Positions 39,197 to 63,139 of a stretch of 64,000 nucleotides of DNA are shown piece by piece. The stretch covers positions 7,998,001-8,062,000 of the forward strand of contig NW_026262669.1 of NCBI RefSeq assembly GCF_021869535.1, written 5' to 3'. The DNA comes from Mytilus californianus (Eukaryota). A program made the translations under genes and the position numbers. Below the pieces are notes generated by a model that did not search any database, had not been told where the DNA came from, and saw nothing but the letters and a program-made list of their open reading frames with translations. Each line of letters opens with the position of its first letter. The stretch's first letter is position 1.

Positions 39197-39978
39197 CTAA
39201 AATAAAGATTATTACAATGTTTTGTGCAATTTATTAGAACGCACCTGCCTGAAACTATTTAATTAAAAACAATTGTTGTTTCGGATTATAAAACTTCTAT
39301 ATTTATGGTCAAAAAGCTGTAATGACTCAGTTACAAAAAAGTCGACAATTGACGGTCTACAAGACCAAAACAAAACAAATAAGGGCGACAATGGCACAAA
39401 ATTTGCACACAAATTTATATAAATGTAAAAAAACTAGCTCAGCTAACAATTTACTCTCCGTGATACATTAATTTGTAACTAAAATACATAATTGCTTTAT
39501 TCAGAAAAAGGCTATTAGACTGAATGTTTCGGATTATACAGATCTGTATATAAAATATTTGAAACACATATATAGATTATGTTCAGTGGTTGTCGTTTGT
39601 TGGTGTGGTTCATATGTGTTTCTCGTTTATCGTTTTTTATAAGTCATTTTGGGGCCCTTTATGGCTTGCTGTTCGGTGTGAGCCAAGGCTCCGTGTTGAA
39701 GGCCGTACTTTGACCTATAATTGTTAACTTTTTATACATTGCGACTTGGATGGAGAGTTGTCTCGAGCATTGGCACTCATACCACATCTTCTTATTTCCA
39801 TTATATTAGAAAATTACGCTCTGGCTGAGCTGCATAGTATTAATGCTTTGTGAGAAATAGACATAATTTATGTGACATTATGTCTTTTATTTACGTTATT
39901 TATTGTTACTCAAAGTTGTGTGTTTGGTCGCTTTTCACGAAGAATCTTATCTTGTTTTGTAATATTAATTTAACTCAC

Positions 39979-40034
39979 CGTGCTATCACTGAACGAAGTC
40001 TCTTCTCGTGAGAGGACAGACATAGCTGTGTCAT
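39979..40034 (-). CDS. CARD-coiled-coil paralog 2, exon 2 (linker)
   Basis: ttacag|AT GAC...ACG|gtgagt; 56 nt, phase 1 to 0; DDTAMSVLSREETSFSDST. The full model is 1113 nt (370 aa). Confidence 0.7.
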
Positions 40035-41097
40035 CTGTAATATGAAATACATGATCTTAAGAAGGATTTTTTAATATCAAACATTTCTCAGAAGATATTG
40101 TTATCTCTAATTTCATACTTTATACAAAACTTTTAAATAATTTGGAATTTTGATGTTTTAAAACTTTTATCAAAATTCCAAAAATCTAAAATTTGAAAAC
40201 TTTTTAAAACTTTGAATTGATAAGTGTTACACGGACCTACATGCATTGCAAATTATGTCTTTATTCAAAAACAACAAACAATAATAATAACATCAATGTT
40301 AAAATAACCCCTCTCATTTGTATGTTTGAGTCTTCTTCAGTATTTAATAGGACTCAAATAATCTCATTTCATATGTGTATTTATGTACATTGACTCTCTT
40401 GTAGTATTATTTCATATCGTTAAAAATATAGTTTTTCTAGATGTTGAAAGTTGTAATTTTCATTGACGTATGATCCGAGGACAGTTATCGTCCTTTAAAA
40501 TATAGTCCCTAGTATGGACAGTGTATAACTCGCAATTTTTTTTCATACACTTTCCAAATTTATTTCTTTATATGCTATGCATGAAATATTTTAGTAGGGT
40601 GATGAAATTACATGTTAAAAATATTGGGTGATGAATTTTTAGGTTACTAAAAGTTGTGATTTATATAAATGTAAAAAAAAAAACTAGCTCCGCTTACAAT
40701 TTACTCTCCGACAATACATTAATTTGTAACTAATTTGTAATTAATCCGTTGTCCAGTTAAAAATAGGTAAAAAATTAGTATGTCTGAAGCTGTCAAAATG
40801 AATTATAGACCCCCTTAACATAGAATTGTCCATATTTTGAGTTAGAGCTATAGACTTTTTTTTATAATTTTGATATAATTTATCACAAAGGTAGTACACT
40901 ACACTGTAAACATCTTTTTGAGGTAGAGCAGGTGCGATTTATTTAATTTGAATTTATTGTTTAAGAGAAATGCATTACGAAATAATTGTGTTCTCGAGCC
41001 GTGGGTCTTGCTTTCCGCGAACTTTGCCCCTCTCCCACACGCATATACACATGTAATGAATGATTGCTGCCTTATAAATGTATACTTTTGTTCTTAC

Positions 41098-41380
41098 CGG
41101 ATGAATCTGTCTGTAGTATTTGATCTGCAATACGTTCATTTCCCGTGGCATTCAACGATTCTACAAAAGAGGTAAAAGCTGTGCCTCCAACAGTGATCAG
41201 TTTCTCAAGTAAGATATTGATTTGTGTTTCCTTTGACGATGCTGATAGAATGTTTGTCTTGTCCACAAGTGTTAGGACGTCATCCTCCATCAATTTGTCT
41301 ACAACCTTAGACAAGCGGACGAGATTATGTTCGATAAATTCACAATTTTTTGTTATTTTCTTGGACAGACATGGATCCAT
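41098..41380 (-). CDS. CARD-coiled-coil paralog 2, first coding exon (CARD domain)
   Basis: MDPCLSKKITKNCEFIEHNLVRLSKVVDKLMEDDVLTLVDKTNILSASSKETQINILLEKLITVGGTAFTSFVESLNATGNERIADQI; donor TCCG|gtaaga, phase 1. Confidence 0.85.
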
Positions 41381-42052
41381 TTTGAATAAAAAGTTTCACT
41401 TCGACTCCAACTTGTGTGAAACTACGTTCTACACCAATTAAAATCTGAACTAATTATTTAAATGTAGAAAAAAAGTATTTGCGCACTTAAGACTTTTTTT
41501 TCTTCTCAAATTTGGCAAAACTCCTCTTTCATTAGATAGATAACAATAAACAGTTTGAAATTATTAATAAAGGAACCATGCAGTGTTGTCCTGTTTTGTA
41601 AAAAACAAAGTGACACATTACTGTATTTATCTTATATCATATTTCCCTACATTGTTTTGTCCTCAAATGTAATTATAATTTTTAAATATACATTAGTTGA
41701 GTCATTTGTTTTCAAACTTGTCATAATAATTTTGAATTTTTCTTTTTGAATACAGTTATAAGTACTGAAAAGGTTTGAGATGGACAGATAAGAAAGAAAA
41801 AGAAAAGTTAATTAGATTTGTACACGAACATTAATTTTTACTACTTATTTTTGGTGGCGGGCATTATGTATAACATTACGGTTTACATATTGTTTTAAAG
41901 TGTAAACTAACATTTGTAACTGCAGGGTGTTCAACAGAAAACCATAACAATAAATAGAAATATAGAGAGATATGTCAGTATTTTATAAACCTTGAATACA
42001 ACTGTTTTTTTTTTTTTGGAAAATTGTGAATACAGTGCATTACTTTTTATAT

Positions 42053-46079: not shown

Positions 46080-46814
46080 CTAACGACCAAACTTTTTATT
46101 GAACTTATTTTGTTTTTGTTGTCTCGGAACATTTCTGTTCATTGTTATAAGTTTGATGATATACTCCATCTTATCGTCAATTTGATCAAATCTTTCATCA
46201 TGACGTTTCTGGTTTTTATCCAGTTCTGCGCGCAGTTCTGCCGAAATCTTCTCTCTTTCTTGACGCCCAGCTTGAAGATGCACCTGTAATTTCCCAACAT
46301 TATTACGTAGAGTCATAATATTATTATCCTTTTGTGCAATGCTTGCCTTAAGTTCTTCGATTTGGTCTTCTAATGTCTCAATCAAATTGTTATAGTGTGT
46401 CGCCTCTTCAGTCAGTGTTTCTATGCTGATAGTCTGCTCTTCCATTCGGAGAAGTAACTCTTCGGAATCAATATGACACCCTACATCTTTCGGAACCTCG
46501 TCCAGTGGACCATCAACGGCATCAATTCCAACATCTCTCCGGTCTACCAATAACTTCGGTTTAGGCTCAACTTTTTTGTCCTTGTCTTTGTTTCGCTTTT
46601 TAAGTTCGTCTTTAATATTTGACGCTCTTTTTTCAACTGCTGCTAACTGACACCGTAGCGAATCGATTTCCTCGTTTAATATTTTTATATCCTCCGATTT
46701 GGTTTTGTTATCTGTTTTTATCTTCCTGTACTTATTAGAAAGTTCATTGTACTTCATTTTGACCATTTCTCTCTCTTTGATTAACTGAATTATTTCTTCC
46801 TTCCGGTCATCAAA
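46080..46814 (-). CDS. CARD-coiled-coil paralog 3, terminal exon (244 aa and stop)
   Basis: tattgtag|TTT (phase 0) gives FDDRKEEIIQLIKEREMVKMKYNEL...KDNNIMTLRNNVGKLQ...RFDQIDDKMEYIIKLI...KKFGR*. Confidence 0.85.
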   Translation of the reverse strand, partial: FDDRKEEIIQLIKEREMVKMKYNELSNKYRKIKTDNKTKSEDIKILNEEIDSLRCQLAAVEKRASNIKDELKKRNKDKDKKVEPKPKLLVDRRDVGIDAVDGPLDEVPKDVGCHIDSEELLLRMEEQTISIETLTEEATHYNNLIETLEDQIEELKASIAQKDNNIMTLRNNVGKLQVHLQAGRQEREKISAELRAELDKNQKRHDERFDQIDDKMEYIIKLITMNRNVPRQQKQNKFNKKFGR

Positions 46815-47107
46815 CTACAATATAAATACAACTATTACTATTATTACAAGTATTCAAATATTGGATTAGGACACAGCAATCATGCTCATAGTGATTTGTG
46901 TCCAAATAAAATGAAACATACACGAATACACGCGCATGCTTAGAACTTTTTCACAACATCGGCATAATGCGTAGGAATGTTTAAAATTGAAAGCTTTTTT
47001 TTACTTTTAAAATCCTGGTTGTAGCATCAAATGCGATTTGGAACTATACGATATGTAATCAAGTCGTTTATACTAAGGACGTTATTTGTATGAAGACACC
47101 AGTTTAT

Positions 47108-47663
47108 AATTGTTAAAGACACATGTGATATATACCTTACTGTAAAGTAGGTACCTTTCTATTGTTAAAGACACATGTGATATATACCTTACTGTGAAGT
47201 AGGTACCTTTCTATTGTTAAAGACACATGTGATATATACCTTACTGTGAAGTAGGTACCTTTCTATTGTTAAAGACACATGTGATATATACCTTACTGTG
47301 AAGTAGGTACCTTTCTATTGTTAAAGACACATGTGATATATACCTTACTGTGAAGTAGGTACCTTTCTATTGTTAAAGACACATGTGATATATACCTTAC
47401 TGTGAAGTAGGTACCTTTCTATTGTTAAAGACACATGTGATATATACCTTACTGTGAAGTAGGTACCTTTCTATTGTTAAAGACACATGTGATATATACC
47501 TTACTGTAAAGTAGGTACCTTTCTCTTGTTAGAGACACATGTGATATATACCTTACTGTAAAGTAGGTACCTTTCTCTTGTTAGAGACACATGTGATATA
47601 TACCTTACTGTGAAGTAGGTACCTTTCTATTGTTAAAGACACATGTGATATATACCTTACTGT
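47108..47663. repeat. 52-bp minisatellite, about 10.6 copies, in a paralog 3 intron
   Basis: Unit tgttaaagacacatgtgatatataccttactgtgaagtaggtacctttctat; a related single copy lies at 47958-47997. Confidence 0.95.
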
Positions 47664-47980
47664 AGAACCTGATGATCAGTATACCTTACTGTAGAACCTG
47701 ATGTTCAGTGGTTGTCGTTTGTTGATGTGGTTCATAAGTGTTTCTCGTTTCTCGTTTTTTTATATAGATTAGACCGTTGGTTTTCCTGTTTGAATGGTTT
47801 TACACTAGTAATTTTTGGGGCCCTTTATAGCTTGCTGTTTGGTGTGAGCCAAGGCTCCGTGTTGAAGGCCGTACTTTGACCAATAATGGTTTACTTTTAC
47901 AAATTTTGACTTGGATGGAGAGTTGTCTCATTGGCACTCATACCACATCTTCTTATATCTACTTACTGTAAAGTAGTTAC

Positions 47981-47997
47981 CTTTCTACTGTTAGAGA
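47981..47997 (-). CDS. Candidate 17-nt micro-exon of paralog 3 (V-S-N-S-R-K)
   Basis: acacacag|TCTCTAACAGTAGAAAG|gtaact converts phase 1 to phase 0, as the model requires. Confidence 0.45.
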
Positions 47998-48715
47998 CTG
48001 TGTGTTGTCATTAACATGTCTTTATAAAAATAGGGAGATGTGGTATGATTGCCATTTAGACAACTATCCACCAAAGTTCAAATAAAGTGGATGTAAGCAA
48101 TTATGGGTAATTGCACGGCCTTCAGCAATGAGAAAACCCATACCGTAAAGTCGGCTATGAAAGGCCCCGAGACGAAAAGTATTAAACAATTCAAATGAAA
48201 AAAACTAACGGTATAATTTATAACAAATCAATTTATATATAAAAAACAAACACGAACCAACGACAAACGCTGAACTACATGCACCTGACTTGGGACAGTC
48301 ACATATATTATGAGAGGTTAAAGATGTTTGAAGGCGCCGACCTTCTGAACCAACGATAAAAATCAGTTAAAAAACGGCTTAACTCATCAGATGGATACAA
48401 AGCAGAAAAACATCTCACAAAAGCACAGACTAGACGTGGCAGGGTATTTATACATCCATCACAACAAAAAAAGACACTAAGTTCAGATCTGAGAGTACTC
48501 GCAGTTACTGACAGCTAGTTCAAATCCAATCACAACTAATAAAAAAATTTAAGAATAAATGTATCTAAAACTAAAATGTCAATCAATACACTTCCGTCAT
48601 CTAATAAGGTTAGTGTAAAGACGTCATTAACAGTCGAAGAAAAACATAACCTTGTGCATTGTCCAAAATATAGGTATCGACATATTGTTTTACCGTGAAT
48701 GTGCATATGTGTTTA

Positions 48716-49177
48716 ACAATTTGCTCGCTTTATTGTCTGACAGTGCTCCAGACCTGACTAAATGACACAATTTGCTCGCTTTATTGTCTGACAGTGCTCC
48801 AGACCGGACTAAATGACACAATTTGCTCGCTTTATTGTCTGACAGTGCTCCAGACCTGACTAAATGACACAATTTGCTCGCTTTATTGTCTGACCGTGCT
48901 CCAGACCTGACTAAATGACACAATTTGCTCGCTTTATTGTCTGACCGTGCTCCAGGCCTGACTAAATGACACAATTTGCTCGCTTTATTGTCTGACCGTG
49001 CTCCAGGCCTGACTAAATGACACAATTTGCTCGCTTTATTGTCTGACCGTGCTCCAGACCTGACTAAATGACACAATTTGCTCGCTTTATTGTCTGACAG
49101 TGCTCCTGGCCTGACTAAATGACACAATTTGCTCGCTTTATTGTCTGACAGTGCTCCAGACCTGACTAAATGACACA
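48716..49177. repeat. 51-bp minisatellite, 9 copies
   Basis: Unit tttgctcgctttattgtctgacagtgctccagacctgactaaatgacacaa. This explains the 17-aa periodic ORF at 48690-49280. Confidence 0.95.
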
Positions 49178-49188
49178 TACGTGAACTA

Positions 49189-49360
49189 TACACCTTATCG
49201 CTATTTGTCCGCCATTGCTGTACATCACAAAAGTTCCCGTAAAATTTTGACGTCATAATAGAAAATATCTGACGCCACAATGGAAAAGTGATTGTTGTAT
49301 GACGTCAAAAGTTCAAGCGGGACAGATTCTCGGGTCAAGCGGGAATAGCAATAAGGTGTA
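49189..49360. mobile_element. Short MITE with TA-bounded ends
   Basis: tacaccttatcgctatt ... aatagcaataaggtgta are inverted termini about 170 bp apart. Confidence 0.65.
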
Positions 49361-49424
49361 TTATGCATATCCTTCAAAGCAATTCTGCGTTTAATCATTC
49401 ACAAGTACTTGTTAATTTACTTAC

Positions 49425-49445
49425 CACAAAGAATGTGTCCGCTTT
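49425..49445 (-). CDS. Optional 21-nt micro-exon of paralog 3 (E-S-G-H-I-L-C)
   Basis: aattacag|AAAGCGGACACATTCTTTGTG|gtaagt; frame-preserving phase 1-1 with a consensus donor. Confidence 0.35.
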
Positions 49446-50174
49446 CTGTAATTGGTTTTTATCTTAAACATAAGAAATGAAAATGTCGGCAACTATAAGA
49501 ATATTTTAAATGTAAATGTAAACTATAATTGGAGATATTTTTAAACAATAACAAACTTTGTGATTTAGTTAACAACGACTTATGTACCTAACAACGACTT
49601 ATGTACCTAACAACGACTTATGTACCTAATATATATAACGGATATTCATAAATTACTCTAGTATGTATAACTGTTTGAAATACGACAAATGCATTTATTT
49701 ATCATTTATAAGTTCTTTTTGATTGTCAACAAAAGTGTCTGCTATCAGTTTAATAAAAAAATTATGAGGGTCTGGATGCGGTTTACCGAATAGAAAAAAT
49801 GGGCCAAATCCATAAAGTATAGAAAATAATGAGGTGCTAAAACATAAAGTGTTGAGAATAATGGACAAAAAAAAAGACTAGAGAAAAATATCATAAAAAA
49901 TGAATGAATAGGCCCCATTCCTCAATTCATTTCATTTATAATTATATATTTTAATGAACAGACCCATTCCATTAATAACTATGTATATATATATGTTTCT
50001 AGCAACTACACAAATGTATATAATTGTACGAATCACAATAAAACATAATAATATTGTAATATGTTAGGATTAATCCCTTTTGTATTGTTGTTTGTTTATA
50101 AGTTTTGTATTTTTTTACCTTTGTGGGTAGAATATCTAAAATAAACCGATGTGATTTATACTTTGTTTTCTTAC

Positions 50175-50234
50175 CATTTTGTTTGCTGACAACATCGTCT
50201 GTTTTGGGGATCTTTTCAGCCATAGAGACTGTCC
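50175..50234 (-). CDS. CARD-coiled-coil paralog 3, exon 2 (linker)
   Basis: atttcag|GG ACA...AAT G|gtaaga; 60 nt, phase 1-1; GTVSMAEKIPKTDDVVSKQN. Confidence 0.65.
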
Positions 50235-50869
50235 CTGAAATATTTATATATATAATCACTTGCCAATATGCAGAAACTAAACTAATATGAAATTTATACA
50301 ATAACTTGAATAGTAACTAGTTAAAAAACTCGTTTTGATATAGACCTGTCAAAATAGATATTATATTTGTTTCTAGTCGTATAAGGATCTTCGATGACAA
50401 AATACAGACCAAACAATGTACAAGGCATCCAGTTTTGATAGCTATTGATATATCAAGAGAAGTTGTGGTATGATAATCAGATTGTCAATGAGACAACTAT
50501 CCACCCGAGTTCAAAGTGACGTGGATTTTATACACGTTTTTGCTAGGATCGTCGAGGACTAAACAGAGGCCTCTTAATGTAAAAGGCATAACGTTTTGAT
50601 ACTTTTATTATAACATAAGGAGATGTGACAATTTTCCATCTGAGTTCATATGTGATAGATTTGTATTCCTGGTCGGGTTAGGATCTTCGAGGACAAAACA
50701 AAACCTTTTAATGTACAAGGCATACAGCTTTGATAGCTGTTGGTGATGTGGTTTGATTGCCAATGAAACAACTAACCATCCGAGTCCAAATAACGTGGAT
50801 TTTTTTACATGTTTTTGTTAGAATCTTCCAGGACAATAAATGTACAAAGCATATAGTTGATTTTCTTAC

Positions 50870-51155
50870 CTTTCTGAGAGCAAACATCAGTTTTGAGTAT
50901 TTTGTCAGCCACATGACCGTTTCCAGATATTTTCAGTGATTCAATCAATGAATCAAATCCACCGCGCTTCATCAACAATTCTAACAAAAGATGACATTGT
51001 GTGTCTACACTTTTCTCTGCTAGTATTTCAGCCTTTTCCTCCATACTTATAGAGTCCGTCTCGATTAATTTGTCCATTACTTTACTCAATTGAGTGATGT
51101 TTTCCTTGAAGAAAACGAGATTTCTTTTTATACGTTTTGCAGACGTTGCATCCAT
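50870..51155 (-). CDS. CARD-coiled-coil paralog 3, first coding exon (CARD domain)
   Basis: MDATSAKRIKRNLVFFKENITQLSKVMDKLIETDSISMEEKAEILAEKSVDTQCHLLLELLMKRGGFDSLIESLKISGNGHVADKI; donor AAAG|gtaaga; 286 nt, the same length as in paralog 1. Confidence 0.85.
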
Positions 51156-52522
51156 TCCAGTTATTGATCAACGCAGCAAATATTGTGTGACTCTCTGTTC
51201 CCTTCTCCGGATTTTTGACATTCGTGACTTGAAAGAAGTCCAAAAGATATATTGAATGGACTTTTGAAGACCTCAATAATATCATAATTTTCTTTAATGT
51301 ATTGTTATGAGCATTTTTGTCTTTATGTATATATATATATATATAATATGTGAAGTTATAATTTGTTTAAAACACGTTTTAAAATTAAGCCTAATTTGTA
51401 ACAAATTAAATTATCGCATTGTCATTAACAATTGGGAAAACCTCAGAAGGCGTAAGACACGTGATCTATTGTCATTTTCCAAAATGAAGAAAGAAAGTTG
51501 ATTCATCATTATATAAATAAAAAGTATATAGTTTTGTATAACAACACAACTTGTATCATAACCAAAATAGAATAAATAGTTTATAGTAAAATGTTAATAA
51601 AATATTTAAAAAACATGAATAAAAGGTGATGTAGGGTAAAGGTCACTGGGACACGACCCAATTGACATGCGCATGCAAACAAAACCACCCATTCAGCAAC
51701 AAAGAGTCTCCAACAGACGACAGGTGTCTGTAAAGACATTACGTCCAACACTATATCGTAACGAGATAAAACAAATTGAATAATAAAGGTAAAAAATATA
51801 GAATACATTTCAATTGATTTTATTTTACACCAGGATAATTTTTAAAAACTATTAAAATGTTTACTCCAGTTCAAATTGTATCAAAGCTCTATTAGTTTTA
51901 AACGAACCACCTATCATAAACGTCCAAATACATATGAAATCTATAAATTTGATAGATTTTGGCAACTTTTGAGTATTCATTGAAAAATTGTACATGAAAG
52001 ACATCCTTTACCCAAACCAAAATCGTGTTGGAAGTGACATTACATAGTGACTTTTGAAAATTTATTTTGTTTGGAAACATTCTTCAATGCCATTTTGTTT
52101 TTGCAAAACATGTACAATTTGCAATTTTGACTTAATTACCAGCGATTGTTTCCATGTAGCCCTGAATTACATTTTAATTCGAGGAAGGAAATTTGTAAAA
52201 GTGACAATGGAAATTTGCTCTCTCTCTCTACCTTTTATATTATCACAATAATAAGATCAGTGTACCATTCAACATCTAATATCTGATATATTAGTGATAG
52301 AGAACATCTGCCTCCATTTCTTTCTTATTTAGGCACAACCGCCATATCTTCCGAATGACGTATCTGCTTTGCAAGACACGATGTTATCTCTCTTCACGGA
52401 TAATTGAACTATCATTTCATATTATCATTATTATTTAGATACGACAACTACATAGCAAATGAAATTATTTGGCTGAAAATCATTTTAAAACCTTTACGAA
52501 ATTAATTTTTGGATATTTTTTT

Positions 52523-52577
52523 ATGTTTGAAATAATGTTTCTATACAGACTGTTTTTATTGTGTCTGATATTTTCAG
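52523..52577 (+). CDS. Secreted antistasin-module protein, exon 1 (signal peptide)
   Basis: MFEIMFLYRLFLLCLIFS then G|gtaagt. It joins exon 2 to give ...IFS-V-CFS/ND, a hydrophobic signal peptide. Confidence 0.7.
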
Positions 52578-53641
52578 GTAAGTTTGTATACTAGTATATC
52601 ATTTATATAAACAGTAGGTTATTGCTTTCAATTTTCACGAAGAAAGGAAATTAATTGTGTTTTACTATCATTATGTATGAAAAAATGGGGGGAAAATATA
52701 CATTCATAAATCTGGCCAGTTTCTAGTAAACTTTCAACAATTTTTGTATGCCTGTATTTAAAAAGACAACGAAAGAAGCTTGGTAGAATTTATGGAATTT
52801 CTTTAAAAATATACGAAATAGAACTGCTCTTGAATCGCACTTTTTTGTAATTTGTGAATGAAGAATTTGATTATTTGGTGTTTCATTATCCTAAAAAAAC
52901 AAAAACAAAAACAGACACAGACAAAAATCCACTTTAAAAAAAATTTATAGATCCTGGGGTTGCTGCAATTTGTAACGCTTTCAAAGAAGTAAGGAATCTT
53001 GTCTGACGTTCAGTGTCTCAGAAAATAGACAAATTTATGGAAAAGGATAAAACAACCACCAAACATGGCAACTACTGAAATTTGTTAATGGTCGGAATAT
53101 TAATGTGTACCAAGTATTTCAATTTAAGCGGATTTCCATTTTAATGCTGAATTAAGAAAACAAAATATAGTAGTGTTACTATCCACGAAAGATCAAATTC
53201 AACGTTGTCTCATTGGCACTCATACCACATCTTTTTATTTATATATATTTCTATAATTTCACGAATGCCACTTAGTCTATTGATTTAGTTGTCCGTGAGG
53301 ACACATGTTTACTAATGGTCTTTCTTCTTTTGGACACGACGGTTTCTTTAGGAGACCTACACATTGATTGCCACATTACATCTTGATTTTTTGTCTTTCT
53401 TTTTTATTCGTAATACCGCTAAAATACAATTGACCCAATTCAACGTGTGTATAGATACATTTCATGCCGATAGGATTTGTGATAGAGGAGCCAATATAAC
53501 TTAAGACATACTGGTTAAAATAGGGCGATACAACACCAAGGTTCAATTATTCTTATATTAGGATATACTAGAAGAAATGTTTAGGAAGTTTTCATGATTT
53601 TTGTTAATGTCTATATTGCAGCTTATCTGTATTATTTTCAG

Positions 53642-54034
53642 TATGTTTTTCAAACGATACTTCAAAGAAACATAGGCCTGAGCGAGTAAGATCAAAAACA
53701 AGTAAAAGATTTAATATGCCAATGGGAATGCCTAGTGGACCTGGAGGAGGTCATGGAGGATCTAGTCCAATGGGAGGAGGACCCTTTCAACATGGTCAAA
53801 TGTCTAGTCCGGGAATGGGAAGTATGATGGGTGGTGGAGGTGGCAATCCAATGCATGGACCAATGACTGGAGGTGGACGTTCCAATAATCCAGCTATGAC
53901 AGGACCACATTCACCGGGTCACACATCAATGTTCAGTGGATCGAGTTTTGGTTGTATACGTCATCAAATTGTGTGTCCACGATGGTGCTTAATCATCGAT
54001 GAAATGGGATGTCACTCCTGTCCGTGTGGTCCTG
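53642..54034 (+). CDS. Exon 2: basic propeptide, Gly/Met/Pro-rich block, antistasin-like module 1
   Basis: ttttcag|TA...CCT G|gtatgg; 393 nt; ...SKTSKRFNMPMGMPSGPGGG...CIRHQIVCPRWCLIIDEMGCHSCPC. Confidence 0.85.
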
Positions 54035-54578
54035 GTATGGTATTAATATAAATTTTTTAGTGTGCACCAATTAACAAAAAACATTGATTTAACTCATGTT
54101 TACACTTCTTTATTATTTTATTCATGTTTAGTTTTATGATATTTTCAGAGGTCGATCAAAGTATCATCTGATAGCGAATTATAATGAAAAATACGTTTTC
54201 TCCCGAAAGTTGCGCATAATTGAAACGTTCGAAAATGTTATGGAATCTACCTTTACTTGAATAAAAAAAAATCTGAAAAAGTTTCATTTCCCTGTCATCA
54301 CACAATGTAGATATTTCTTAAAACTATTAGAAAAAGACTTACACTTTTTCTTCCACGAAATATATATATTCTTAATTCCGATTGCAAAACGGTAACACCT
54401 ACTTCATATAATTCAATCAGGAAAAAATATATAAATATTTCACTAAAAACTACATAATTTATGTTCCCTCTATGTCGTGATATGATGCAGATATGCTCCT
54501 CTTAAACGAAAATACACCCAAGAACTCTTATAAATTAATGACATTAATATGATTTTGCTATTTTAAAAAAAGCTGCAG

Positions 54579-54788
54579 GAATGGCGTTGCCACAAAACAA
54601 TCTGATGTCATCTATAATGTCGACAACAACAGGAAACTATCATACAGGAAGTTCAACAACCGGAAACGGAAGTGGAGAAAAGCAATGCCTAGGACAACTG
54701 TTATGTATGTCATCATGTAAAAATTCCTACACTTTAGGGCCTGTTGGACACGATGGCTGCCGTTCTTGTACATGTGAATCAGGATCAG
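54579..54788 (+). CDS. Exon 3: Thr/Ser/Gly linker and antistasin-like module 2
   Basis: ctgcag|GA...TCA G|gtaaag; 210 nt; CLGQLLCMSSCKNSYTLGPVGHDGCRSCTC. Confidence 0.85.
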
Positions 54789-55283
54789 GTAAAGAAAGTA
54801 TTGTGTATCATTTTTGTCAACTCCTATCACTTGAAAGTGTTATACACCACATATTTGACTCTTGAAAACAATACATTAAGAAAGCAATTCATTTTTGTCA
54901 AGTATAGAACCTAGTGGAGAGAAAAATATATACTTATATAAGCTTGCCCTGTTGTATAACTTTCAGTATAGAATATAGTTTCATGTAAAGATATGTTACC
55001 AATTTCAGACAGTATTTCTAATAACTTTAAAAAAAGGACCATTGTAAATAGTTAGTTATTCATTTATTTACTTAACCTTATTTTTATTTTATAAATCATG
55101 TATTGAATAAGCTTTCACCTTGTATTTATACTTGGAATAATATATTTTAAAGACCAATACTGTATTAAGATAACGTTTTTAAAACCATTTCAAAACATTT
55201 TTATTTTGTTGTCTATTTGTGGTTAAAACATTTTGTTTGCATGTTATTTCATAACCAACAATTCCCTTTTCTTCACATTTAAG

Positions 55284-55598
55284 GATACGGATATGGTAGT
55301 GGTTCTTCCGGCGGATATACAGGAGGTGGAAGTTCCGGTGGTGGCTCAAGTGTTTCAGGAGGAGGTTATACAGGATTCGGAGGAGGATATACTGGTGGGG
55401 TTACAGGTGGTTCTACGTCAACTCACACGAGTCATCAGGTCTCAACAAACCAGGTAAAATATGTAGTACAGCAAAAGAAGGAATGTACTGCACTGAAATT
55501 ATGCATGCAATCATGTGACACCGGGTACCAGTTGGGTGCAGTTCAAACTGATGGATGCCATAAATGTTTTTGTCCTCCAAAGAAGACGTATGTCTATG
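55284..55598 (+). CDS. Exon 4: Gly/Tyr/Ser-rich block and antistasin-like module 3 (not in the ORF track)
   Basis: atttaag|GA TAC...TAT G|gtaagt; 315 nt; GYGYGSGSSGGYTGGG...CTALKLCMQSCDTGYQLGAVQTDGCHKCFC. Confidence 0.85.
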
Positions 55599-56470
55599 GT
55601 AAGTTTTAATTCTTTGTTACATATTATACAGCTTTGGTTTTCCTGTTTGAGTGGTTTTACACTAGTCATTTTTGGGGCCCTTTATAGCTTGCTGTTCGGT
55701 GTGAGCCAAAGGCTCCGTGTTGAAGGTCGTACTTTGACCTACATGTATAATTGTTTACTTTTTACAGATTGTGACTTGGATGGAGAGTTGTCTCATTGGC
55801 TCTCATACCACATCTTCTTATTTCTATTAATTTTATAAAAAAAAAACAAAAAAAAAACAAACAAACCGAAGCGTAACATGATAAAATATTAAACGCGATG
55901 ATGGATACATTGTATTCGTCTTGCTACCCAGTTTTTAAATGAACTCTATATAAAAAATAAGAAGATGGGGTATGATTGCCAATGAAAAAACTCTCAACCA
56001 GAGACCACATGACATAGAAGTTAACAACTGTAGGTCACCGATGAACAAAACCCATACAGCATAGCTAGAAAGCTTTAAAAGGTCTCAAAACAACAAATGT
56101 AAAAAAAAAATAAAACGAGAAACTAACGGTTATTTTTGATGAAATTACATTGGTTCAACACTTTACCATCAGTGCAAGTCATGTGTCATTATTGAATTGT
56201 TGCAGTCTATCAGTGCGAGTCAGGTGTCATAACCTCTTTTTACAGTCTGCTAGTGCATAACATGTTTAAGAACCTTGCACTGATTTTGTTTCAATATGTC
56301 GGGACATGTCATGTGTACAAACATTGATTTCAGTGGCTTATGAGTTTAACGTATAAGCTCGTTTGAGGTGAATTTCACGTGAACAAAAAAAATAGTATCT
56401 GTCATGTATTTAATTAAATTTGAAAATTTGAATGTTCATTCTTAAAATAATTGCCTTTTTACACTTTCAG

Positions 56471-56659
56471 TTCAGCCACAAGTACAAGTTGTCCAACCTC
56501 CAAAGAAACAGTATGTTTATACAACTCAAGTACAAACCTATAAACCAGTCGCCAACACATTCACGTGTACCAGTTCATTCAGTTGTCAATACGGATGTAA
56601 TGTTGGATACAAGTGTGGAACCGATGGTTGTCCAATCTGTGAATGTATTCATCCGCAAG
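56471..56659 (+). CDS. Exon 5: Gln/Pro/Val linker and antistasin-like module 4
   Basis: ctttcag|TT CAG...CAA G|gtagta; 189 nt; CTSSFSCQYGCNVGYKCGTDGCPICEC. Confidence 0.85.
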
Positions 56660-57166
56660 GTAGTAATTAGAAAGCGAACAAATGTTTCCGCAATGAAGTA
56701 TATACATAAAAAGTTGCATGAACATATATAGTAGACACCGTTGATATTATATTGTTCCATCCTTAGCATGATCATAATTAGAAATTTCCTATTACATTTC
56801 ATGTTTTATTTTGTGTAAATCAGAGTTGTAAAGAATAAAAATTTGCCGTGTACTTGCAAGAACAGTTTACGGTTTCACTTCACTTTTTCAGTCTAGATTC
56901 TGAATTAGACATGCAATTGTAGTATGACTTTTCAATTTTTTTTTTATCTCTTATGTCAAAAACAAATGAGGACAACTGTGAACATTTAAGAATGCAGCTA
57001 TTAAATTTAATAAATCAAATTTCTCTTTTATTTTGTTAAACCTTTGCGTATTGTTTATGAACATCAAATATTCATAAAAAGGTCAAGGTTAAGATTAAAA
57101 GACATAACTTTGTTCTTCTATCACTTACTACTTCTACCGAAACATACATCATTATCAGTTTATCAG

Positions 57167-57328
57167 TTGTAGGACTCCAAGTAACAGAAGTAATTAGACC
57201 TCAAGCAGTACAGTGTACTAGTTCCTTCTCCTGCCCTAGAAGTTGTCAACTGGGATATAAATGTGGTACAGACGGGTGTCCTACCTGTGAATGTCTTATT
57301 GCTGTTCAGACCCAGTTGGTTAACACAG
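57167..57328 (+). CDS. Exon 6: antistasin-like module 5 (paralogous to exon 5)
   Basis: ttatcag|TT GTA...ACA G|gtaaca; 162 nt, with an alternative in-frame acceptor 6 nt downstream; CTSSFSCPRSCQLGYKCGTDGCPTCEC. Confidence 0.8.
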
Positions 57329-57825
57329 GTAACACATTGTACATTTACAGTTAATTGTCGTATTGCTGTGCAGTTGTGTCCAGACTCAGGTTGTTAACAC
57401 AGGTAGAATGTTTAAATATAACTGCGAACGATTTATTGCTGTCAGGATTCATGTTGCAAACATAGATACATACTAGTATTTTATTAATTAAAAATCGCTA
57501 CAATTATAGAAATGAGATGCTAAACCGAAATTAAACTTGTTTTCTCTGCCTCTAGAATCCAAAATTATGATGAAAAGTCACGTATCATGGAATTGACATT
57601 GCATGAATTATCACTTGTTATAATGGTTATTTGGTAGATAAAGACAATAGGAAGTGTTCTTACTGCAGTATAAAAGACATTCTAAATGTATCGTATAACT
57701 GTACAATCCCCTATAAATACAAATTGTGAATCAGGTTACTAATAGTGAATCAGGTTACTAATAGTGAATCAGGTTACTAATAGTGAATCAGGTTACTGCA
57801 AAGCCTTATTGCTTTTCATACTCAG

Positions 57826-60016
57826 TTTTGCAGAATATGTAAGCTTCGTCGTATCATTGGGCAATACAGATATCAAATATCTCGCATGTATACACGTAGT
57901 CATCATTAGTTACTAGTATTTATGTCAGAATATGTAAGCTTCGTCGTATCATTGGGCAATACAGATATCAAATATCTCGCATGTATACACGTAGTCATCA
58001 TTAGTTACTAGTATTTATGTCAGAATATGTAAGCTTCGTCGTATCATTGGGCAATACAGATATCAAATATCTCGCATGTATACACGTAGTCATCATTAGT
58101 TCCTAGTATTTATGTCAGAATATGTAAGCTTCGTCGTATCATTGGGCAATACAGATATCAAATATCTCGTATGTATACACGTAGTCATCATTAGTTACTA
58201 GTATTTATGTCAGAATATGTAAGCTTCGTCGTATCATTGGGCTATACAGATATCAAATATCTCGTATATATACACGTAGTCATCATTAGTTACTAGTATT
58301 TATGTCAGAATATGTAAGCTTCGTCGTATCATTGGGCAATACAGATATCAAATATCTCGCATGTATACACGTAGTCATCATTAGTTACTAGTATTTATGT
58401 CAGAATATGTAAGCTTCGTCGTATCATTGGGCAATACAGATATCAAATATCTCGCATGTATACACGTAGTCATCATTAGTTACTAGTATTTATATCAGAA
58501 TATGTAAGCTTCGTCGTATCATTGGGCAATACAGATATCAAATATCTCGCATGTATACACGTAGTCATCATTAGTTACTAGTATTTATGTCAGAATATGT
58601 AAGCTTCGTCGTATCATTGGGCAATACCGATATCAAATATCTCGCATGTATACACGTAGTCATCATTAGTTACTAGTATTTATGTCAGAATATGTAAGCT
58701 TCGTCGTATCATTGGGTAATACAGATATCTAATATCTCGCATGTATGCACGTAGTCATCATTAGTTACTAGTATTTATGTCAGAATATGTAAGCTTCGTC
58801 GTATGATTGGGCAATACAGATATCAAATATCTCGTATGTATACACGTAGTCATCATTAGTCACTAGTATTTATGTCAGAATATGTAAGCTTCGTCGTATC
58901 ATTGGGCAATACAGATATCAAATATCTCGTATGTATACACGTAGTCATCATTAGTTACTAGTATTTATGTCAGAATATGTAAGCTTCGTCGTATCATTGG
59001 GCAATACAGATATCAAATATCTCGCATGTATACACGTAGTCATCATTAGTTACTAGTATTTATGTCAGAATATGTAAGCTTCGTCGTATCATTGGGCAAT
59101 ACAGATATCAAATATCTCGTATGTATACACGTAGTCATCATTAGTTACTAGTATTTATGTCAGAATATGTAAGCTTCGTCGTATCATTGGGCAATACAGA
59201 TATCAAATATCTCGCATGTATACACGTAGTCATCATTAGTTACTAGTATTTATGCCAGAATATGTAAGCTTCGTCGTATCATTGGGCAATACAGATATCA
59301 AATATCTCGCATGTATACACGTAGTCATCATTAGTTACTAGTATTTATGTCAGAATATGTAAGCTTCGTCGTATCATTGGGCAATACAGATATCAAATAT
59401 CTTGCATGTATACACGTAGTCATCATTAGTTACTAGTATTTATGTCAGAATATGTAAGCTTCGTCGTATCATTGGGCAATACAGATATCAAATATCTCGC
59501 ATGTATACACGTAGTCATCATTAGATACTAGTATTTATATCAGAATATGTAAGCTTCGTCGTATCATTGGGCAATACAGATATCAAATATCTCGCATGTA
59601 TACACGTAGTCATCATTAGTTACTAGTATTTATGTCAGAATATGTAAGCTTCGTCGTATCTTTGGGCAACACAGATATCAAATATCTCGCATGTATACAC
59701 GTAGTCATCATTAGTTACTAGTATTTATATCAGAATATGTAAGCTTCGTCGTATCATTGGGCAATACAGATATCAAATATCTCGCATGTATACACGTAGT
59801 CATCATTAGTTACTAGTATTTATATCAGAATATGTATGCTTCGTCGTATCATTGGGCAATACAGATATCAAATATCTCGCATGTATACACGTAGTCATCA
59901 TTAGTTACTAGTATTTATATCAGAATATGTATGCTTCGTCGTATCATTGGGCAATTCAGATATCAAATATCTCGCATGTATACACGTAGTCATCATTAGT
60001 TACTAGTATTTATGTT
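57826..60016. repeat. 95-bp tandem repeat, about 23 copies, intronic
   Basis: Unit gtatttatgtcagaatatgtaagcttcgtcgtatcattgggcaatacagatatcaaatatctcgcatgtatacacgtagtcatcattagttacta. Identical register at 58201 and 59341 equals 12 x 95. Confidence 0.97.
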
Positions 60017-60038
60017 AGATACATCTTGTATTTTCTAG

Positions 60039-60569
60039 ATTGCGTTGACTGTGATGATATAGACAGATATAAGCAGCACTATGTCAAACCACAGAAACAA
60101 TACGTTGTTGTTCAACCTCATACAGAATGCACTGATTGTGGTACCCAAATTGTGTATCAGAAACCTCAACAACAAGTCGTTTACGTTCAGAAACCACAAC
60201 TACAAACAGAATGTACTGATTGTGGTACCCAAGTTGTATATCAGAAACCAAAGCCACAAGTCGTGTACATACAGAAACCACAACCACAAACAGAATGTAC
60301 TGATTGTGGTACCCAAGTTGTATATCAGAAACCAAAGCCACAAGTCGTGTACATACAGAAACCACAACCACAAAAAGTGGTGTATGTTACACAGACTCAG
60401 ACAGAAACATGCCACGGATGTGAGACAAAACCACAAATTGTGTACACCAGACCAAAGCCACAACAACAAATCGTTTACATTACTAAACCAAAGCCACAGC
60501 CACAGAAAGTCTACGTTTCACAGACACAAACTTGTAATAATTGTGGAGAAAAGCAACCACAAAAGAGTT
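60039..60569 (+). CDS. Exon 7: CxxC and (V/I)VYQKPQ repeat region
   Basis: tttctag|AT TGC...AGT T|gtaagt; 531 nt; TECTDCGTQxVYQKP repeated three times; six CxxC motifs in total. Confidence 0.85.
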
Positions 60570-61136
60570 GTAAGTTTTATTTCAATGTACTCCTGAGAGT
60601 AAAAAGAGGAGAACAATAGCAACGTGGCAATCGACGTTATTTATGACAAATATTTGTTTGATAGGAATTGGACCAGTTAACACATCAATTAACGTTAACA
60701 AAACTTCCAACAACTGTCGACTGTAAATACTATATACATATACTGTATATGAAAAGTGAATCCAAGTCGTGTTGTTTTATATTGGTTACGAATGTAATCC
60801 AGTGAAAACAATAAATCAAGAAGTAACATTTATCAGAATCGAAAGCGCTATTTACCAATGTGAATTATTGAAAAATTATCATTATATATAAGCGAGCCAA
60901 TACATTTTTATGAATCAGTCCATTCGGTATAACATTAAGGTGTACTTTAGTATTTAAAATTGAGAATGGAAATGGGGAATGTGTCAAAGAGACAACAACC
61001 CGACCACAGAACAGACAACAGCAGAAGGCCACCAACAGGTGTATATTCATGTGCTTAAAATTCAGTAATTTTATATTGTTAACGTTGATAGATTTTTTCC
61101 CTTGTCTTTTATTGTCAAATACTATATTTTTTTCAG

Positions 61137-61352
61137 TAATCGTCGGTCATCTCGTATCAAGTGGCGGAACAACTGGAGGAGGAGCTTATATCAGTGGTGG
61201 CGGCGGTTCATATTCTGGTGGCGGTGGATCATATTCTGGTGGTGGCGGATCATATTCTGGAGGAGGCGGATCCCACACGGGAAGTGGTGGATCATTCTCC
61301 GGCGGAGGTGCAGCGATGATGGGTGGTGGATCCACGGGAGGAATGACTATAG
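61137..61352 (+). CDS. Exon 8: Gly/Ser-rich (GGGGSYS)n block
   Basis: tttttcag|TA ATC...ATA G|gtactc; 216 nt. The donor is weaker, and reading through it would stop at 61369. Confidence 0.75.
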
Positions 61353-63052
61353 GTACTCTATCACTGTGACAATACGATAGTTCTAGGAATTTGTAGGGAC
61401 GGTAATATATGTGTATAACATGTTCACTTTGAGAAACTAAGGTTTCAACTCCCTCAGGCAAAGTTGACCTTAGATGGATTTGGCTATTTGTTTTAGGTAT
61501 TTTTGTCATATTGCTCTTCAATTGTTTCGGTACTTATACATCCCTCGGATTACAAATGTTTGGCTTTGGGCGTTCCTGATGAAGGTAAATCCAGAAAAGC
61601 GCTTCGGACGCATGAAATTATTAAACGTGTTGTTTTCAATTCTTTAAGACACAAGATCTAACAAAAATACAACAAAACATAAGACATATGGTATATAACA
61701 CGTGCGAAATTAAAAAAAAGATTTGACATGGGGCGGTTTATCAAAACAATAATCTACCAGGTTAAACCAGTCATTTTCGTTTTAAAACATGCCAGTACCA
61801 AGTCAGGAATATGACAGTCGTTTTACATTCGTTTCGTTGGTTTATATAGCATAACGTTTGATTTTCTCATTTTTTATGGACTTCCCTCCTTTTGAGTTGA
61901 CCTTTGAGTTTGGTATTTTTGTTTATTAATTTCTACGAGAAACTTGAAAATGTAAGAGTAACATTAAGTACATTTTCAACATGGCATTACCAGTGTATAA
62001 ACCTTATTAATTACACAACTGGTGAATTCATTATCCAATCACTGTTTCTCGGCAAACATGTACTATAGCTGACTATGCGGTATGGGTATACTCATTGTTG
62101 AAGGCCGTACGGTGACCTATATTCGTTAATTTCTGTGTCATTTGGTCTTTTGAGGAGAATTGTCTCATTGGCGATCATACTTCATCTTCTTATTTTTATA
62201 AGCTATCACAACGAAAATAGTTACACAAATAGCTAATAAGAAAATAACGCAATCAAATTAGATACACTGCATAACTAATTCTTTCATCAGCATATCTGGA
62301 GACACGCACTCAGTCTCACTGCTTTATGAGTTCATACGATTCTCTCAGTTTTGGTTTGCCTTCCTAATCAGTTTATAGGATTTGAACATCGATTAACTTC
62401 TATTACTTTAATCAAGAACAGTTACCCGGATGCCTTTAGATCAGTTCCTTACAGAAGCTGTTCTACCCTGAAACAATTTAGGACAATTCTAGCCTTAAAC
62501 AGAATCTGACCGTCTAAGAGTTCTATCATGAAACGGATTTGGACAGTTTTATCATAGAGCATATTTAGTCAGTTTTATTTCTCAAACAGTTCAAATTCAA
62601 CTATAAAAGCAAACTTAACTATGAATAAACTCATCATAGATAATAGAATTAAAATTTTGCACGACGGACGCGCGTTTCGCCTACATAAGACTCATCAGTG
62701 ACGCTCGAATCAAAAAAGTTAATCAGGCCATATGAAGTACGAACTTGAAGAGCATTGAGGACCCAACATTCTGAAAGGTTTTGACAAATACATGGTAAAA
62801 AGTATAAAAAAATACCAAACTCCAATGTGAATTCAAAAAGGGGATGTCCTTAAAAACAGACAAAATCAAATGTTATCAACCAACGGAACAAATGGAAACA
62901 GCTGTCATATTCTTGACTTGGTACATACATTTTTGGAAGTAATCCATTCCTGGGGCAGAAAATCCTTGATATTGGAACACGCTGTAAAATACACTCCTAC
63001 TTACATGTTAATTATTATTCGTAATAAAAAGAGTTAAATGTTAAATTTTCAG

Positions 63053-63139
63053 CCAACTGTCCACCAATGCCACACGACTGTGAACCATCGTGTATAAAAT
63101 ATGACGAACCACACTGTCGGAGATGCGAATGCGAACAAC
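63053..63139 (+). CDS. Exon 9: antistasin-like module 6 (not in the ORF track); the gene continues past this point
   Basis: ttttcag|CC AAC...CAA C|gtaagt; 87 nt, phase 1-1; ANCPPMPHDCEPSCIKYDEPHCRRCECEQ. Confidence 0.8.

What the first reader, a model, noticed from the sequence alone, without database searches (positions are those of the whole stretch)
52523..63139. Large secreted mosaic protein: six antistasin-like modules alternating with Gly-, Met-, Tyr- and Gln/Pro-rich low-complexity blocks
Seen: nine exons, all eight internal ones symmetric phase 1-1 (393, 210, 315, 189, 162, 531, 216 and 87 nt), at least 719 aa, with a signal peptide and six C-x5/6-C-x3-C-x7/13-C-x2-C-x-C modules. Several exons are absent from the ORF track. 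Established: this spacing matches the antistasin family (Pfam PF02822), and molluscan extracellular structural proteins such as abalone Lustrin A combine Cys modules, Gly/Ser elastomeric blocks and protease-inhibitor domains. Inference: an apparently uncharacterised shell, periostracum, byssus or mucus matrix protein built by exon shuffling. Skipping any internal exon preserves the frame, allowing combinatorial isoforms.
Basis: partly seen in the sequence, partly recalled or inferred. Interest (0 to 1): 0.75.

Follow-up and report, generated by a model that had tools for sequence, protein, structure and literature searches.

The report
Secreted mussel cysteine-knot and glycine-rich protein
This is a real mussel gene for a secreted protein made of six small cysteine knots joined by floppy glycine-, methionine- and glutamine-rich spacers; it is conserved across bivalves and already in the databases under a misleading "keratin-like" name and without its signal peptide, and its function is still untested.

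Summary
All nine exons are present with canonical AG/GT sites, all boundaries are phase 1, and the six-cysteine pattern occurs exactly six times in the 64 kb window, each time inside a predicted exon.

Corrections:
- Exon 3 probably starts 6 nt earlier, at 54573.
- A tenth, last exon lies 87 nt beyond the window.
- The conserved start codon is the second ATG, at 52535.

The window is Mytilus californianus. The gene is already RefSeq XP_052096528.1, named "keratin, type I cytoskeletal 9-like". That model starts inside exon 2 and lacks the signal peptide.

Orthologues with the same module order and intron positions exist in oysters, Pinctada and Mercenaria, so the architecture is old, not a recent shuffle. 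dN/dS against M. trossulus is 0.14.

Only modules 4 and 5 are recognisably antistasin by Pfam. The other four share the cysteine framework.

No exon-skipped isoforms were seen in oyster transcripts. My best reading is a secreted, cross-linkable matrix protein. No paper on it was found. An earlier follow-up in this scan (s1-287908) had already identified this genome as a mussel's.

The parts
52523..52577 (+). Exon 1: start codons at 52523 and 52535 and the signal peptide (hydrophobic core LFLLCLIFS), ending in phase 1
   Evidence: Donor CAG|gtaagt. Matches the N-terminus of M. trossulus XP_063437143.1 and M. galloprovincialis XP_076082046.1. Lies in a DNA block conserved with M. trossulus, and dN/dS is 0.15. 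Absent from the RefSeq model of this species.
53642..54034 (+). Exon 2: basic pro-region ending in KR-FN, a Met/Gly/Pro-rich spacer, and module 1 (53953-54027, short-loop type)
   Evidence: The K-R-F-N/S motif is conserved in oysters, Saccostrea and Pinctada.
54573..54788 (+). Exon 3: Ser/Thr/Gly spacer and module 2 (54686-54775, long-loop type).
Evidence: Also.
55284..55598 (+). Exon 4: Gly/Tyr/Ser spacer and module 3 (55484-55573, long-loop type)
56471..56659 (+). Exon 5: Gln/Pro/Val spacer and module 4 (56566-56646, seven Cys, GYKCGTDGC type)
   Evidence: Pfam Antistasin 18 bits, E 0.004.
57167..57328 (+). Exon 6: module 5 (57214-57294, seven Cys), the best antistasin match
   Evidence: Pfam Antistasin 23.4 bits against a cut-off of 21.2. 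The module 4-5 pair has 28 invariant columns across 12 bivalve sequences.
57831..60019 (.). Tandem array of 23 copies of a 95-bp unit, filling most of intron 6
   Evidence: The unit is single-copy in the orthologous M. trossulus intron.
60039..60569 (+). Exon 7: Gln/Pro/Val/Tyr/Lys-rich block with six C-x-x-C pairs, including 3.1 copies of an 84-nt repeat
   Evidence: Single copy in this genome. Related blocks occur in Pinctada and oysters.
61137..61352 (+). Exon 8: Gly/Ser/Tyr spacer (GGGGSYS repeats)
63053..63139 (+). Exon 9: module 6 (63058-63132, short-loop type). The donor leads to a last exon outside the window, at window-scale 64087-64124 (L002:1087-1124).
   Evidence: 100% amino-acid identity with M. 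trossulus.

Best explanation
What it is. This is the Mytilus californianus member of a bivalve-wide family of secreted proteins of about 730 residues.

Shown:
- Ten exons form one gene.
- The protein has an N-terminal signal peptide.
- A short basic pro-region ends in a conserved Lys-Arg followed by Phe-Asn.
- Six small six-cysteine modules of the antistasin framework follow, each at the 3' end of its own phase-1 exon.
- The modules are separated by low-complexity spacers: Met/Gly/Pro, Ser/Thr/Gly, Gly/Tyr/Ser, Gln/Pro/Val and Gly/Ser/Tyr.
- One 176-residue Gln/Pro/Val/Tyr block carries six C-x-x-C pairs.
- All exons are under purifying selection.

Inferred mechanism. After signal-peptide removal, and probably convertase cleavage after the Lys-Arg, the mature chain is a string of rigid three-disulfide knots joined by disordered, elastomer-like spacers. 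It is laid down outside the cell as a flexible building block of an extracellular matrix that can be cross-linked. Cross-links could form through its roughly 5% tyrosine, the unpaired seventh cysteines of modules 4 and 5, and the C-x-x-C pairs (disulfide or metal bridges). The most likely location is a shell-associated organic framework such as periostracum, insoluble matrix or ligament, rather than the mussel-specific byssus, because non-byssate adults such as oysters and hard clams keep the gene. Protease inhibition by some modules is possible but secondary.
For: - Gene model.
- Identity with RefSeq XP_052096528.1, on a contig of the same length as C89.
- Signal-peptide exon in sister species and oysters.
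- An oyster contig of 2508 nt with one 726-residue reading frame maps to the C. angulata genome in 10 collinear blocks. In oysters the homologous exons are therefore co-transcribed and spliced.
- dN/dS is 0.14 overall and below 0.4 for every exon.
- DNA conservation with M. trossulus and with a Logan genomic contig is centred on the exons, spilling into adjacent intron at some.
- Module order and post-module intron positions are conserved in M. trossulus, C. angulata and Mercenaria.
- Antistasin hits.
- Composition: Gly 16%, Gln 10%, Cys 7%, Tyr 5%, pI 8.4, 50 Cys.
- In the AlphaFold model only the modules show secondary structure, and the spacers have pLDDT of about 25-35.
- Met/Gly-rich regions are a reported hallmark of insoluble shell framework proteins in Pinctada (PMC7591529).
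Against: - There are no expression or proteome data for this gene in any tissue.
- No spliced Mytilus transcript fragments turned up in the protein collection, only genomic fragments.
- Motif searches of a Perna viridis shell proteome, a Perna byssus proteome and Pinctada insoluble shell/ligament proteins were negative.
- The protein is basic, not acidic like many mineral-binding shell proteins.
- Low pLDDT may reflect only the shallow 12-sequence alignment.
- Signal peptide and convertase cleavage are read from the sequence, not predicted by a dedicated program.
Confidence: 0.55

Rival explanations
1. It is a multi-headed secreted serine-protease inhibitor. Each antistasin-type module would present a reactive loop between its second and third cysteine, as in leech antistasin and hirustasin. 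The spacers would merely tether the heads, for example to control proteolysis in digestive fluid, haemolymph or the extrapallial space.
For: Modules 4 and 5 match Pfam Antistasin, and 28 of 45 family modules do. The only two Foldseek matches of the module 4-5 model were antistasin (1skz) and gigastasin (5ubm_I), though at E 5-9. At the position that I recall as P1 in antistasin, modules 2 and 3 have Met here and Lys or Arg in oysters. Antistasin-type inhibitors are highly expressed in mussel digestive gland (PMC5549309).
Against: At the same position, modules 1 and 5 have Pro, module 4 has Gln and module 6 has Glu. The P1 assignment is from memory and was not tested here. The modules lack the extra four-cysteine N-terminal subdomain of the leech inhibitors. 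Profile and sequence searches against solved structures found no antistasin-family chain. VIA-align found nothing at Z of 2 or more. More than half of the protein is conserved low-complexity spacer, which an inhibitor does not need.
Confidence: 0.17
2. It is a byssal or other adhesive-secretion protein of the foot. Antistasin-like proteins are found in Perna byssus and in adhesive secretions of Hydra, limpets and sea stars.
For: An antistasin-like protein was identified by proteomics in Perna viridis byssus (PMC6508894). Papers on Hydra, limpet and sea-star adhesion also mention antistasin (listed but not opened here). The protein has Tyr- and Gly-rich spacers and a basic pI.
Against: Orthologues with the same architecture exist in oysters, Saccostrea, Pinctada and Mercenaria, most of which have no adult byssus. 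The family's signature motifs are absent from the Perna byssal protein supplement.
Confidence: 0.1
3. The model is wrong in part. On this reading exon 1 is not used in M. californianus, as in the RefSeq model, or the locus is weakly expressed or decaying, so no secreted 730-residue protein is made.
For: The RefSeq protein starts at the internal Met of exon 2. The RNA evidence could not be obtained.
Against: All reading frames and splice sites are intact. dN/dS is 0.14, including exon 1. Exon 1 is annotated in two sister species. A 50-cysteine protein without a signal peptide would be implausible.
Confidence: 0.06

Closest known systems
RefSeq XP_052096528.1, 'keratin, type I cytoskeletal 9-like' (Mytilus californianus), and its orthologues XP_063437143.1 (M. 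trossulus), XP_076082046.1 (M. galloprovincialis), XP_071140948.1 (M. edulis) and CAC5362536.1 (M. coruscus)
   Same: It is the same gene. Exons 3-10 and most of exon 2 are identical letter for letter.
   Different: The M. californianus and M. edulis models start inside exon 2 and lack the signal peptide and pro-region (43 residues). The name comes from glycine-rich low complexity; no keratin domain is found. The M. coruscus model is fused to the downstream Apple-domain gene.
Leech antistasin-type inhibitors (antistasin, hirustasin, gigastasin; Pfam PF02822)
   Same: They share the six-cysteine unit C-x4-6-C-x3-C-x10-C-x2-C-x-C with conserved Gly. Module 5 passes the Pfam cut-off.
   Different: There is no four-cysteine N-terminal subdomain. 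The loop is lengthened to 13 residues in modules 2-3 and shortened to 7 in modules 1 and 6. Modules 4-5 have a seventh Cys. Most reactive-site positions are non-basic. Long low-complexity spacers are present. Inhibition is untested.
Lustrin A of abalone nacre
   Different: No sequence relationship was found in any search here. Lustrin's modules have a different cysteine pattern, and it ends in a different inhibitor-like domain. This is an analogy only.
Perna viridis byssal antistasin-like protein (ALP; PMC6508894)
   Same: It is a mytilid secreted protein with antistasin-type repeats of six Cys and two Gly.
   Different: ALP is 236 residues and over 20% Cys, and the paper describes it as internal 30-residue repeats. 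The signature motifs of the present family are absent from that paper's sequence supplement.
Paralogous bivalve family: M. californianus 'major surface-labeled trophozoite antigen 417-like' (P0044), Pinctada KAK3094756.1, and the oyster and M. edulis 'cysteine-rich motor neuron 1 protein-like' entries
   Same: Same module types in the same order (short-loop, long-loop, tandem seven-Cys pair, C-x-x-C block, Gly-rich block, short-loop), at 33-39% identity.
   Different: They have more long-loop modules, shorter spacers and no Met/Gly-rich N-terminal block.
Met/Gly-rich insoluble shell and ligament proteins (Pinctada NU-5 and LMP; scallop abductin)
   Same: Spacer composition is similar. The Met/Gly-rich stretches here resemble the Met-rich regions reported as common to insoluble framework proteins. 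The resemblance to abductin is from my own knowledge.
   Different: There is no homology. LMP and the second ligament protein have no cysteine modules.

Membership tests
Antistasin-like domain (Pfam PF02822) | Score at or above the Pfam gathering cut-off (21.2 bits) | tested here: inconclusive
   Module 5 scores 23.4 bits (met), module 4 scores 18.0 and module 2 scores 12.0. Modules 1, 3 and 6 give no hit. Whole-protein scans give nothing. 28 of 45 modules from the family hit at E of 0.1 or better.
Antistasin-like domain (Pfam PF02822) | Six conserved cysteines with C-x4-6-C-x3-C-xn-C-x2-C-x-C spacing | tested here: met
   All six modules have it. There are six invariant Cys columns over 45 aligned modules. 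The third loop is 7, 10 or 13 residues instead of the usual 10.
Antistasin-like domain (Pfam PF02822) | Fold of the solved antistasin-family inhibitors | tested here: inconclusive
   The model of modules 4-5 has a mean pLDDT of 62. Foldseek returns only 1skz and 5ubm_I, at E 5.4 and 9.2. VIA-align finds nothing at Z of 2 or more. Sequence and profile searches of PDB chains found no antistasin-family chain.
Antistasin-type protease inhibitors (MEROPS I15) | Reactive-site residue suited to a serine protease (Arg, Lys or Met) after the second Cys of the unit | tested here: not met
   The residues read Pro, Met, Met, Gln, Pro and Glu for modules 1-6, so it is met at most for modules 2 and 3. The position is assigned from my memory of antistasin Arg34.
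Antistasin-type protease inhibitors (MEROPS I15) | Measured inhibition of a protease | not testable with these tools
   Needs recombinant protein and an enzyme assay.
Keratin, type I (the RefSeq name) | Intermediate-filament rod domain; cytoplasmic protein without a signal peptide | tested here: not met
   No filament domain in any exon or orthologue. A signal peptide and 50 cysteines are present.
Secreted protein | N-terminal signal peptide | tested here: met
   Exon 1 encodes a short positively charged start, a hydrophobic core of about ten residues and small residues at the -3 and -1 positions of the likely cleavage site. It is conserved in M. trossulus, M. galloprovincialis and oysters. 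No dedicated predictor was available.
Shell matrix, periostracum, ligament or byssus protein | Peptides recovered from the material, or expression in the secreting epithelium | tested here: inconclusive
   RNA runs were unavailable. Motif searches in three supplementary sequence sets were negative. Other proteome supplements were not held as text.

The most novel reading that the evidence does not exclude
The family could be a so far undescribed, bivalve-wide 'knot-and-spring' matrix protein. Abductin-like Met/Gly and Gly/Tyr springs would be tethered by antistasin-type disulfide knots and a C-x-x-C cross-linking block. It would form a core organic component of a structure common to all bivalves, such as the hinge ligament, the periostracum or the larval shell, which standard proteomics has missed because it is insoluble and poor in tryptic sites.
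Probability: 0.12. Interest if true: 0.7.

Novelty: new member of a known kind. Interest (0 to 1): 0.35.

Why it matters
The practical gains are a corrected gene model and a corrected name. The protein is secreted and has antistasin-type cysteine knots. It is not a keratin and is not cytoplasmic.

The family keeps its module order and most of its modules across Pteriomorphia and at least one heterodont clam, with no gastropod relative among the hits. It is therefore a candidate for a shared bivalve extracellular material. It could be looked for in shell, periostracum, ligament and byssus proteomes that may have missed it with truncated or fused database entries.

If some modules do inhibit proteases, it would also be an unusual tethered inhibitor. 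None of this is surprising in kind, since mollusc genomes hold many such mosaics.

Tried and rejected
- Joined model.
- Solved structures. A profile of 45 modules, and module 5 alone, found no antistasin chain among solved structures.
- Structure. The two-module model reached a mean pLDDT of only 62 and the full-length model 34. Foldseek gave two insignificant antistasin-family hits and VIA-align none.
- ESM Atlas. No usable hit.
- Literature. Accession numbers, signature motifs, the RefSeq name and run accessions gave no paper. Papers mentioning antistasin in bivalves concern other proteins.
- Supplement motif searches were negative for the Pinctada insoluble shell/ligament proteins, the Perna shell proteome and the Perna byssus proteome. 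One proteome paper has no text supplement.
- Pinctada ligament proteins. I considered and rejected the idea that this is LMP or the second ligament protein, because their printed sequences have no cysteine modules.
- Exon skipping. A search for exon-skipped isoforms among oyster transcripts found only variation in a 7-residue Gln/Val/Pro cassette.
- Mytilus transcripts. A search for spliced Mytilus transcript fragments returned only genomic fragments.
- No contig looked human.

Full report
OBSERVATION

The region holds nine exons on the + strand: E1 52523-52577, E2 53642-54034, E3 54579-54788, E4 55284-55598, E5 56471-56659, E6 57167-57328, E7 60039-60569, E8 61137-61352 and E9 63053-63139. 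Every acceptor is AG behind a pyrimidine-rich tract. Every donor is GT, mostly GTAAG. Every boundary falls after the first base of a codon.

The pattern C-x4-7-C-x3-C-x5-15-C-x2-C-x-C occurs six times in all six frames of the 64 kb window. All six fall inside E2, E3, E4, E5, E6 and E9, and the pattern did not occur in any of 30 shuffles.

IDENTITY OF THE LOCUS

The window is contig C89, positions 7998001-8062000, of its genome. A HMMER search with exon 7 against 1.8 billion representative proteins found a 690-residue protein. This is RefSeq XP_052096528.1, "keratin, type I cytoskeletal 9-like [Mytilus californianus]". It is recorded on a contig of 12,069,346 bases, the length of C89.

The translations of E3 to E9 and of the 3' 106 codons of E2 occur in it letter for letter and in order. 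The gene is therefore already annotated. An earlier follow-up in this scan had already called this genome a mussel's.

CORRECTIONS TO THE MODEL

It uses an AG six bases upstream, so E3 runs 54573-54788 and is 216 nt, still phase 1-1. All Mytilus orthologues read the same. The two AGs are a tandem acceptor, so both forms are possible.

Second, the donor at 63139 leads to a last exon just outside the window, at window-scale 64087-64124 (L002:1087-1124). It encodes twelve residues and the stop, with AATAAA signals directly after.

Third, the RefSeq protein starts at the Met inside exon 2 and has no signal peptide. The M. trossulus (XP_063437143.1) and M. galloprovincialis (XP_076082046.1) proteins begin with a near-identical hydrophobic leader. 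It corresponds to E1 read from its second ATG at 52535, followed by the same basic stretch of exon 2.

E1 and its upstream flank form a conserved block between M. californianus and M. trossulus DNA. With both corrections the product is 733 residues from 52523, or 729 from 52535.

IS IT ONE TRANSCRIBED GENE?

Word searches found only genomic fragments of Mytilus relatives, not spliced transcripts.

The indirect evidence is strong:
- Against M. trossulus, every exon shows purifying selection, with dN/dS of 0.14 overall, 0.07-0.40 for E1 to E8, and no amino-acid change in E9.
- DNA conservation with M. trossulus, and with a Logan genomic contig of another relative, is centred on the exons, though at E3 and E6 it runs on into the adjacent intron.
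- In oysters a 2508-nt Logan contig carries one uninterrupted 726-residue reading frame with a signal peptide, the basic pro-region and all six modules.
- That contig maps to the Crassostrea angulata genome in ten collinear blocks at 96-100% identity, except 89% for the last block (final coding exon plus repeat-rich 3' UTR). It is therefore a spliced mRNA of the orthologue.

THE FAMILY

Full-length relatives at 33-39% identity exist in Crassostrea/Magallana, Saccostrea, Pinctada (split over two models) and the heterodont clam Mercenaria. There is also a second, paralogous lineage in Mytilus, Pinctada and oysters. Apart from Logan-only contigs, whose species I could not tell, all named hits were bivalves.

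The modules fall into three types that keep their order across species:
- short-loop (x7): modules 1 and 6;
- long-loop (x13): modules 2 and 3;
- a tandem pair with a seventh cysteine (motif GYKCGxDGCPTCEC): modules 4 and 5.

The module 4-5 pair with its linker has 28 invariant columns across twelve sequences. Introns sit just after each module in M. trossulus, C. angulata and Mercenaria too.

The one-cassette-per-exon, all-phase-1 layout is thus consistent with an origin by exon duplication. But it dates to before the split of the bivalve lineages sampled here and is not a recent shuffle. In this genome the seven-Cys module type also occurs on contig C24 and 75 kb downstream on C89.

ARE THE MODULES ANTISTASIN?

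Scanned alone, module 5 passes the Pfam Antistasin cut-off (23.4 against 21.2 bits). Module 4 scores 18 and module 2 scores 12. Modules 1, 3 and 6 give nothing.

Whole proteins give no Pfam hit at all. That would explain why only a composition-driven keratin name was assigned.

Across 45 modules of the family, 28 hit Antistasin and no other family recurs. All 45 align on six invariant cysteines.

Structure gave little. The module 4-5 model has a pLDDT of 62. Its only two Foldseek matches are antistasin (1skz) and gigastasin (5ubm_I), at insignificant E-values. VIA-align and sequence searches of solved chains found nothing.

I accept "antistasin framework" for all six modules and "antistasin family" firmly only for modules 4 and 5.

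WHAT IT PROBABLY DOES

Shown features of the product:
- It has a signal peptide and a basic pro-region ending in Lys-Arg followed by Phe-Asn. The motif K-R-F-N/S is conserved in Mytilus, oysters, Saccostrea and Pinctada.
- It has 50 cysteines: 36 in the six frameworks, 2 extra in modules 4 and 5, and 12 in six C-x-x-C pairs in exon 7.
- Composition is Gly 16%, Gln 10%, Tyr 5%, with a pI of 8.4.
- In the full-length model only the modules show secondary structure. All spacers, including exon 7, have pLDDT of 25-35. This is weak evidence, given twelve sequences.

I infer a secreted string of rigid disulfide knots joined by disordered spacers, used as a cross-linkable element of an extracellular material. 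Met-rich regions are reported as common to insoluble framework proteins of Pinctada nacre, prisms and ligament (PMC7591529). The Gly/Met spacers also recall abductin (my own knowledge).

Because oysters and hard clams keep the gene, a byssus-only role is unlikely. The named Pinctada ligament proteins are unrelated. The family's motifs are absent from the Perna shell and byssus supplements. The tissue is therefore open.

THE INHIBITOR RIVAL

The position after the second cysteine is, as I recall, the reactive Arg34 of antistasin. There the six modules carry Pro, Met, Met, Gln, Pro and Glu. At most modules 2 and 3 look like canonical inhibitors, and their oyster counterparts have Lys and Arg there. 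This keeps a partial inhibitor role alive, but it does not explain the conserved spacers.

ISOFORMS

It is arithmetically true that skipping any internal exon keeps the frame. Among eleven oyster proteins and transcripts, however, all modules are always present. The only internal variation besides small Gly-rich indels and one probable retained intron (P0054) is zero, one or two copies of a 7-residue Gln/Val/Pro cassette between modules 3 and 4. This may be a micro-exon or allelic variation. The isoform idea is unsupported, and it is untested in Mytilus.

VERDICT

This is a real, conserved, secreted mosaic gene. It is already in the databases, but under a wrong name and, in this species, without its signal peptide. 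No paper on it was found in the library searched.

It is a new member of a known kind: a mollusc secreted mosaic with antistasin-type modules. Interest is moderate to low until expression or proteome data place it.

All searches used single exons or database proteins.

Noticed in passing
window 57831-60019 (also 57718-57797): A 95-bp unit is repeated 23 times at 97% identity and fills most of intron 6. The same unit is single-copy in the orthologous M. trossulus intron, so the array expanded in the M. californianus lineage. A 19-bp repeat of 4.2 copies sits just upstream.
   Followed up: partly
window 54570-54578: Two AG acceptors lie 6 nt apart at the start of exon 3. RefSeq and the orthologues use the upstream one. 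Use of both would give isoforms differing by Ala-Ala.
   Followed up: partly
L002:1087-1124 (window-scale 64087-64124): The 12-residue C-terminal tail ends in Gly-Lys in all Mytilus species, a possible amidation signal. In M. californianus it contains QFFGLM, which resembles the C-terminal motif of tachykinins (from memory). Sister species have QFSGLM, and there is no upstream cleavage site, so this is probably chance.
   Followed up: no
L002:6825-7223 (window-scale 69825-70223): An open frame with a PAN/Apple-like cysteine pattern lies about 6 kb downstream. The M. coruscus annotation (CAC5362536.1) fuses it to this gene, which looks like a merged model.
   Followed up: partly
G000:C89:8135386-8136193 and G000:C24:24299483-24303531: Further seven-Cys antistasin-type modules occur in this genome. 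One set lies only 75 kb downstream on the same contig. Another, on C24, may be the paralogue named 'major surface-labeled trophozoite antigen 417-like' (location not checked).
   Followed up: partly
window 9889-13682, 38861-41395, 46083-51167 (- strand): Repeated pairs of open frames look like a death-fold/CARD-like N-terminal exon followed by a long coiled-coil exon. This is probably a tandem gene family, and it is unrelated to the finding.
   Followed up: no
window 24263-25168 and 28497-29402 (- strand): Two near-identical copies of transposase-like open frames (144 and 98 residues) lie about 4.2 kb apart, which looks like a duplicated Tc1/mariner-type element.
   Followed up: no
window 20160-20570 and 48693-49304: There is a long trinucleotide-type microsatellite that is open in several frames. 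There is also a tandem repeat encoding a 17-residue unit (about 51 bp) on the - strand.
   Followed up: no
L012:6400-8400 (C. angulata): The 3' UTR of the oyster orthologue runs into a tandem repeat with many diagonal matches extending over about 2 kb downstream of the gene.
   Followed up: no
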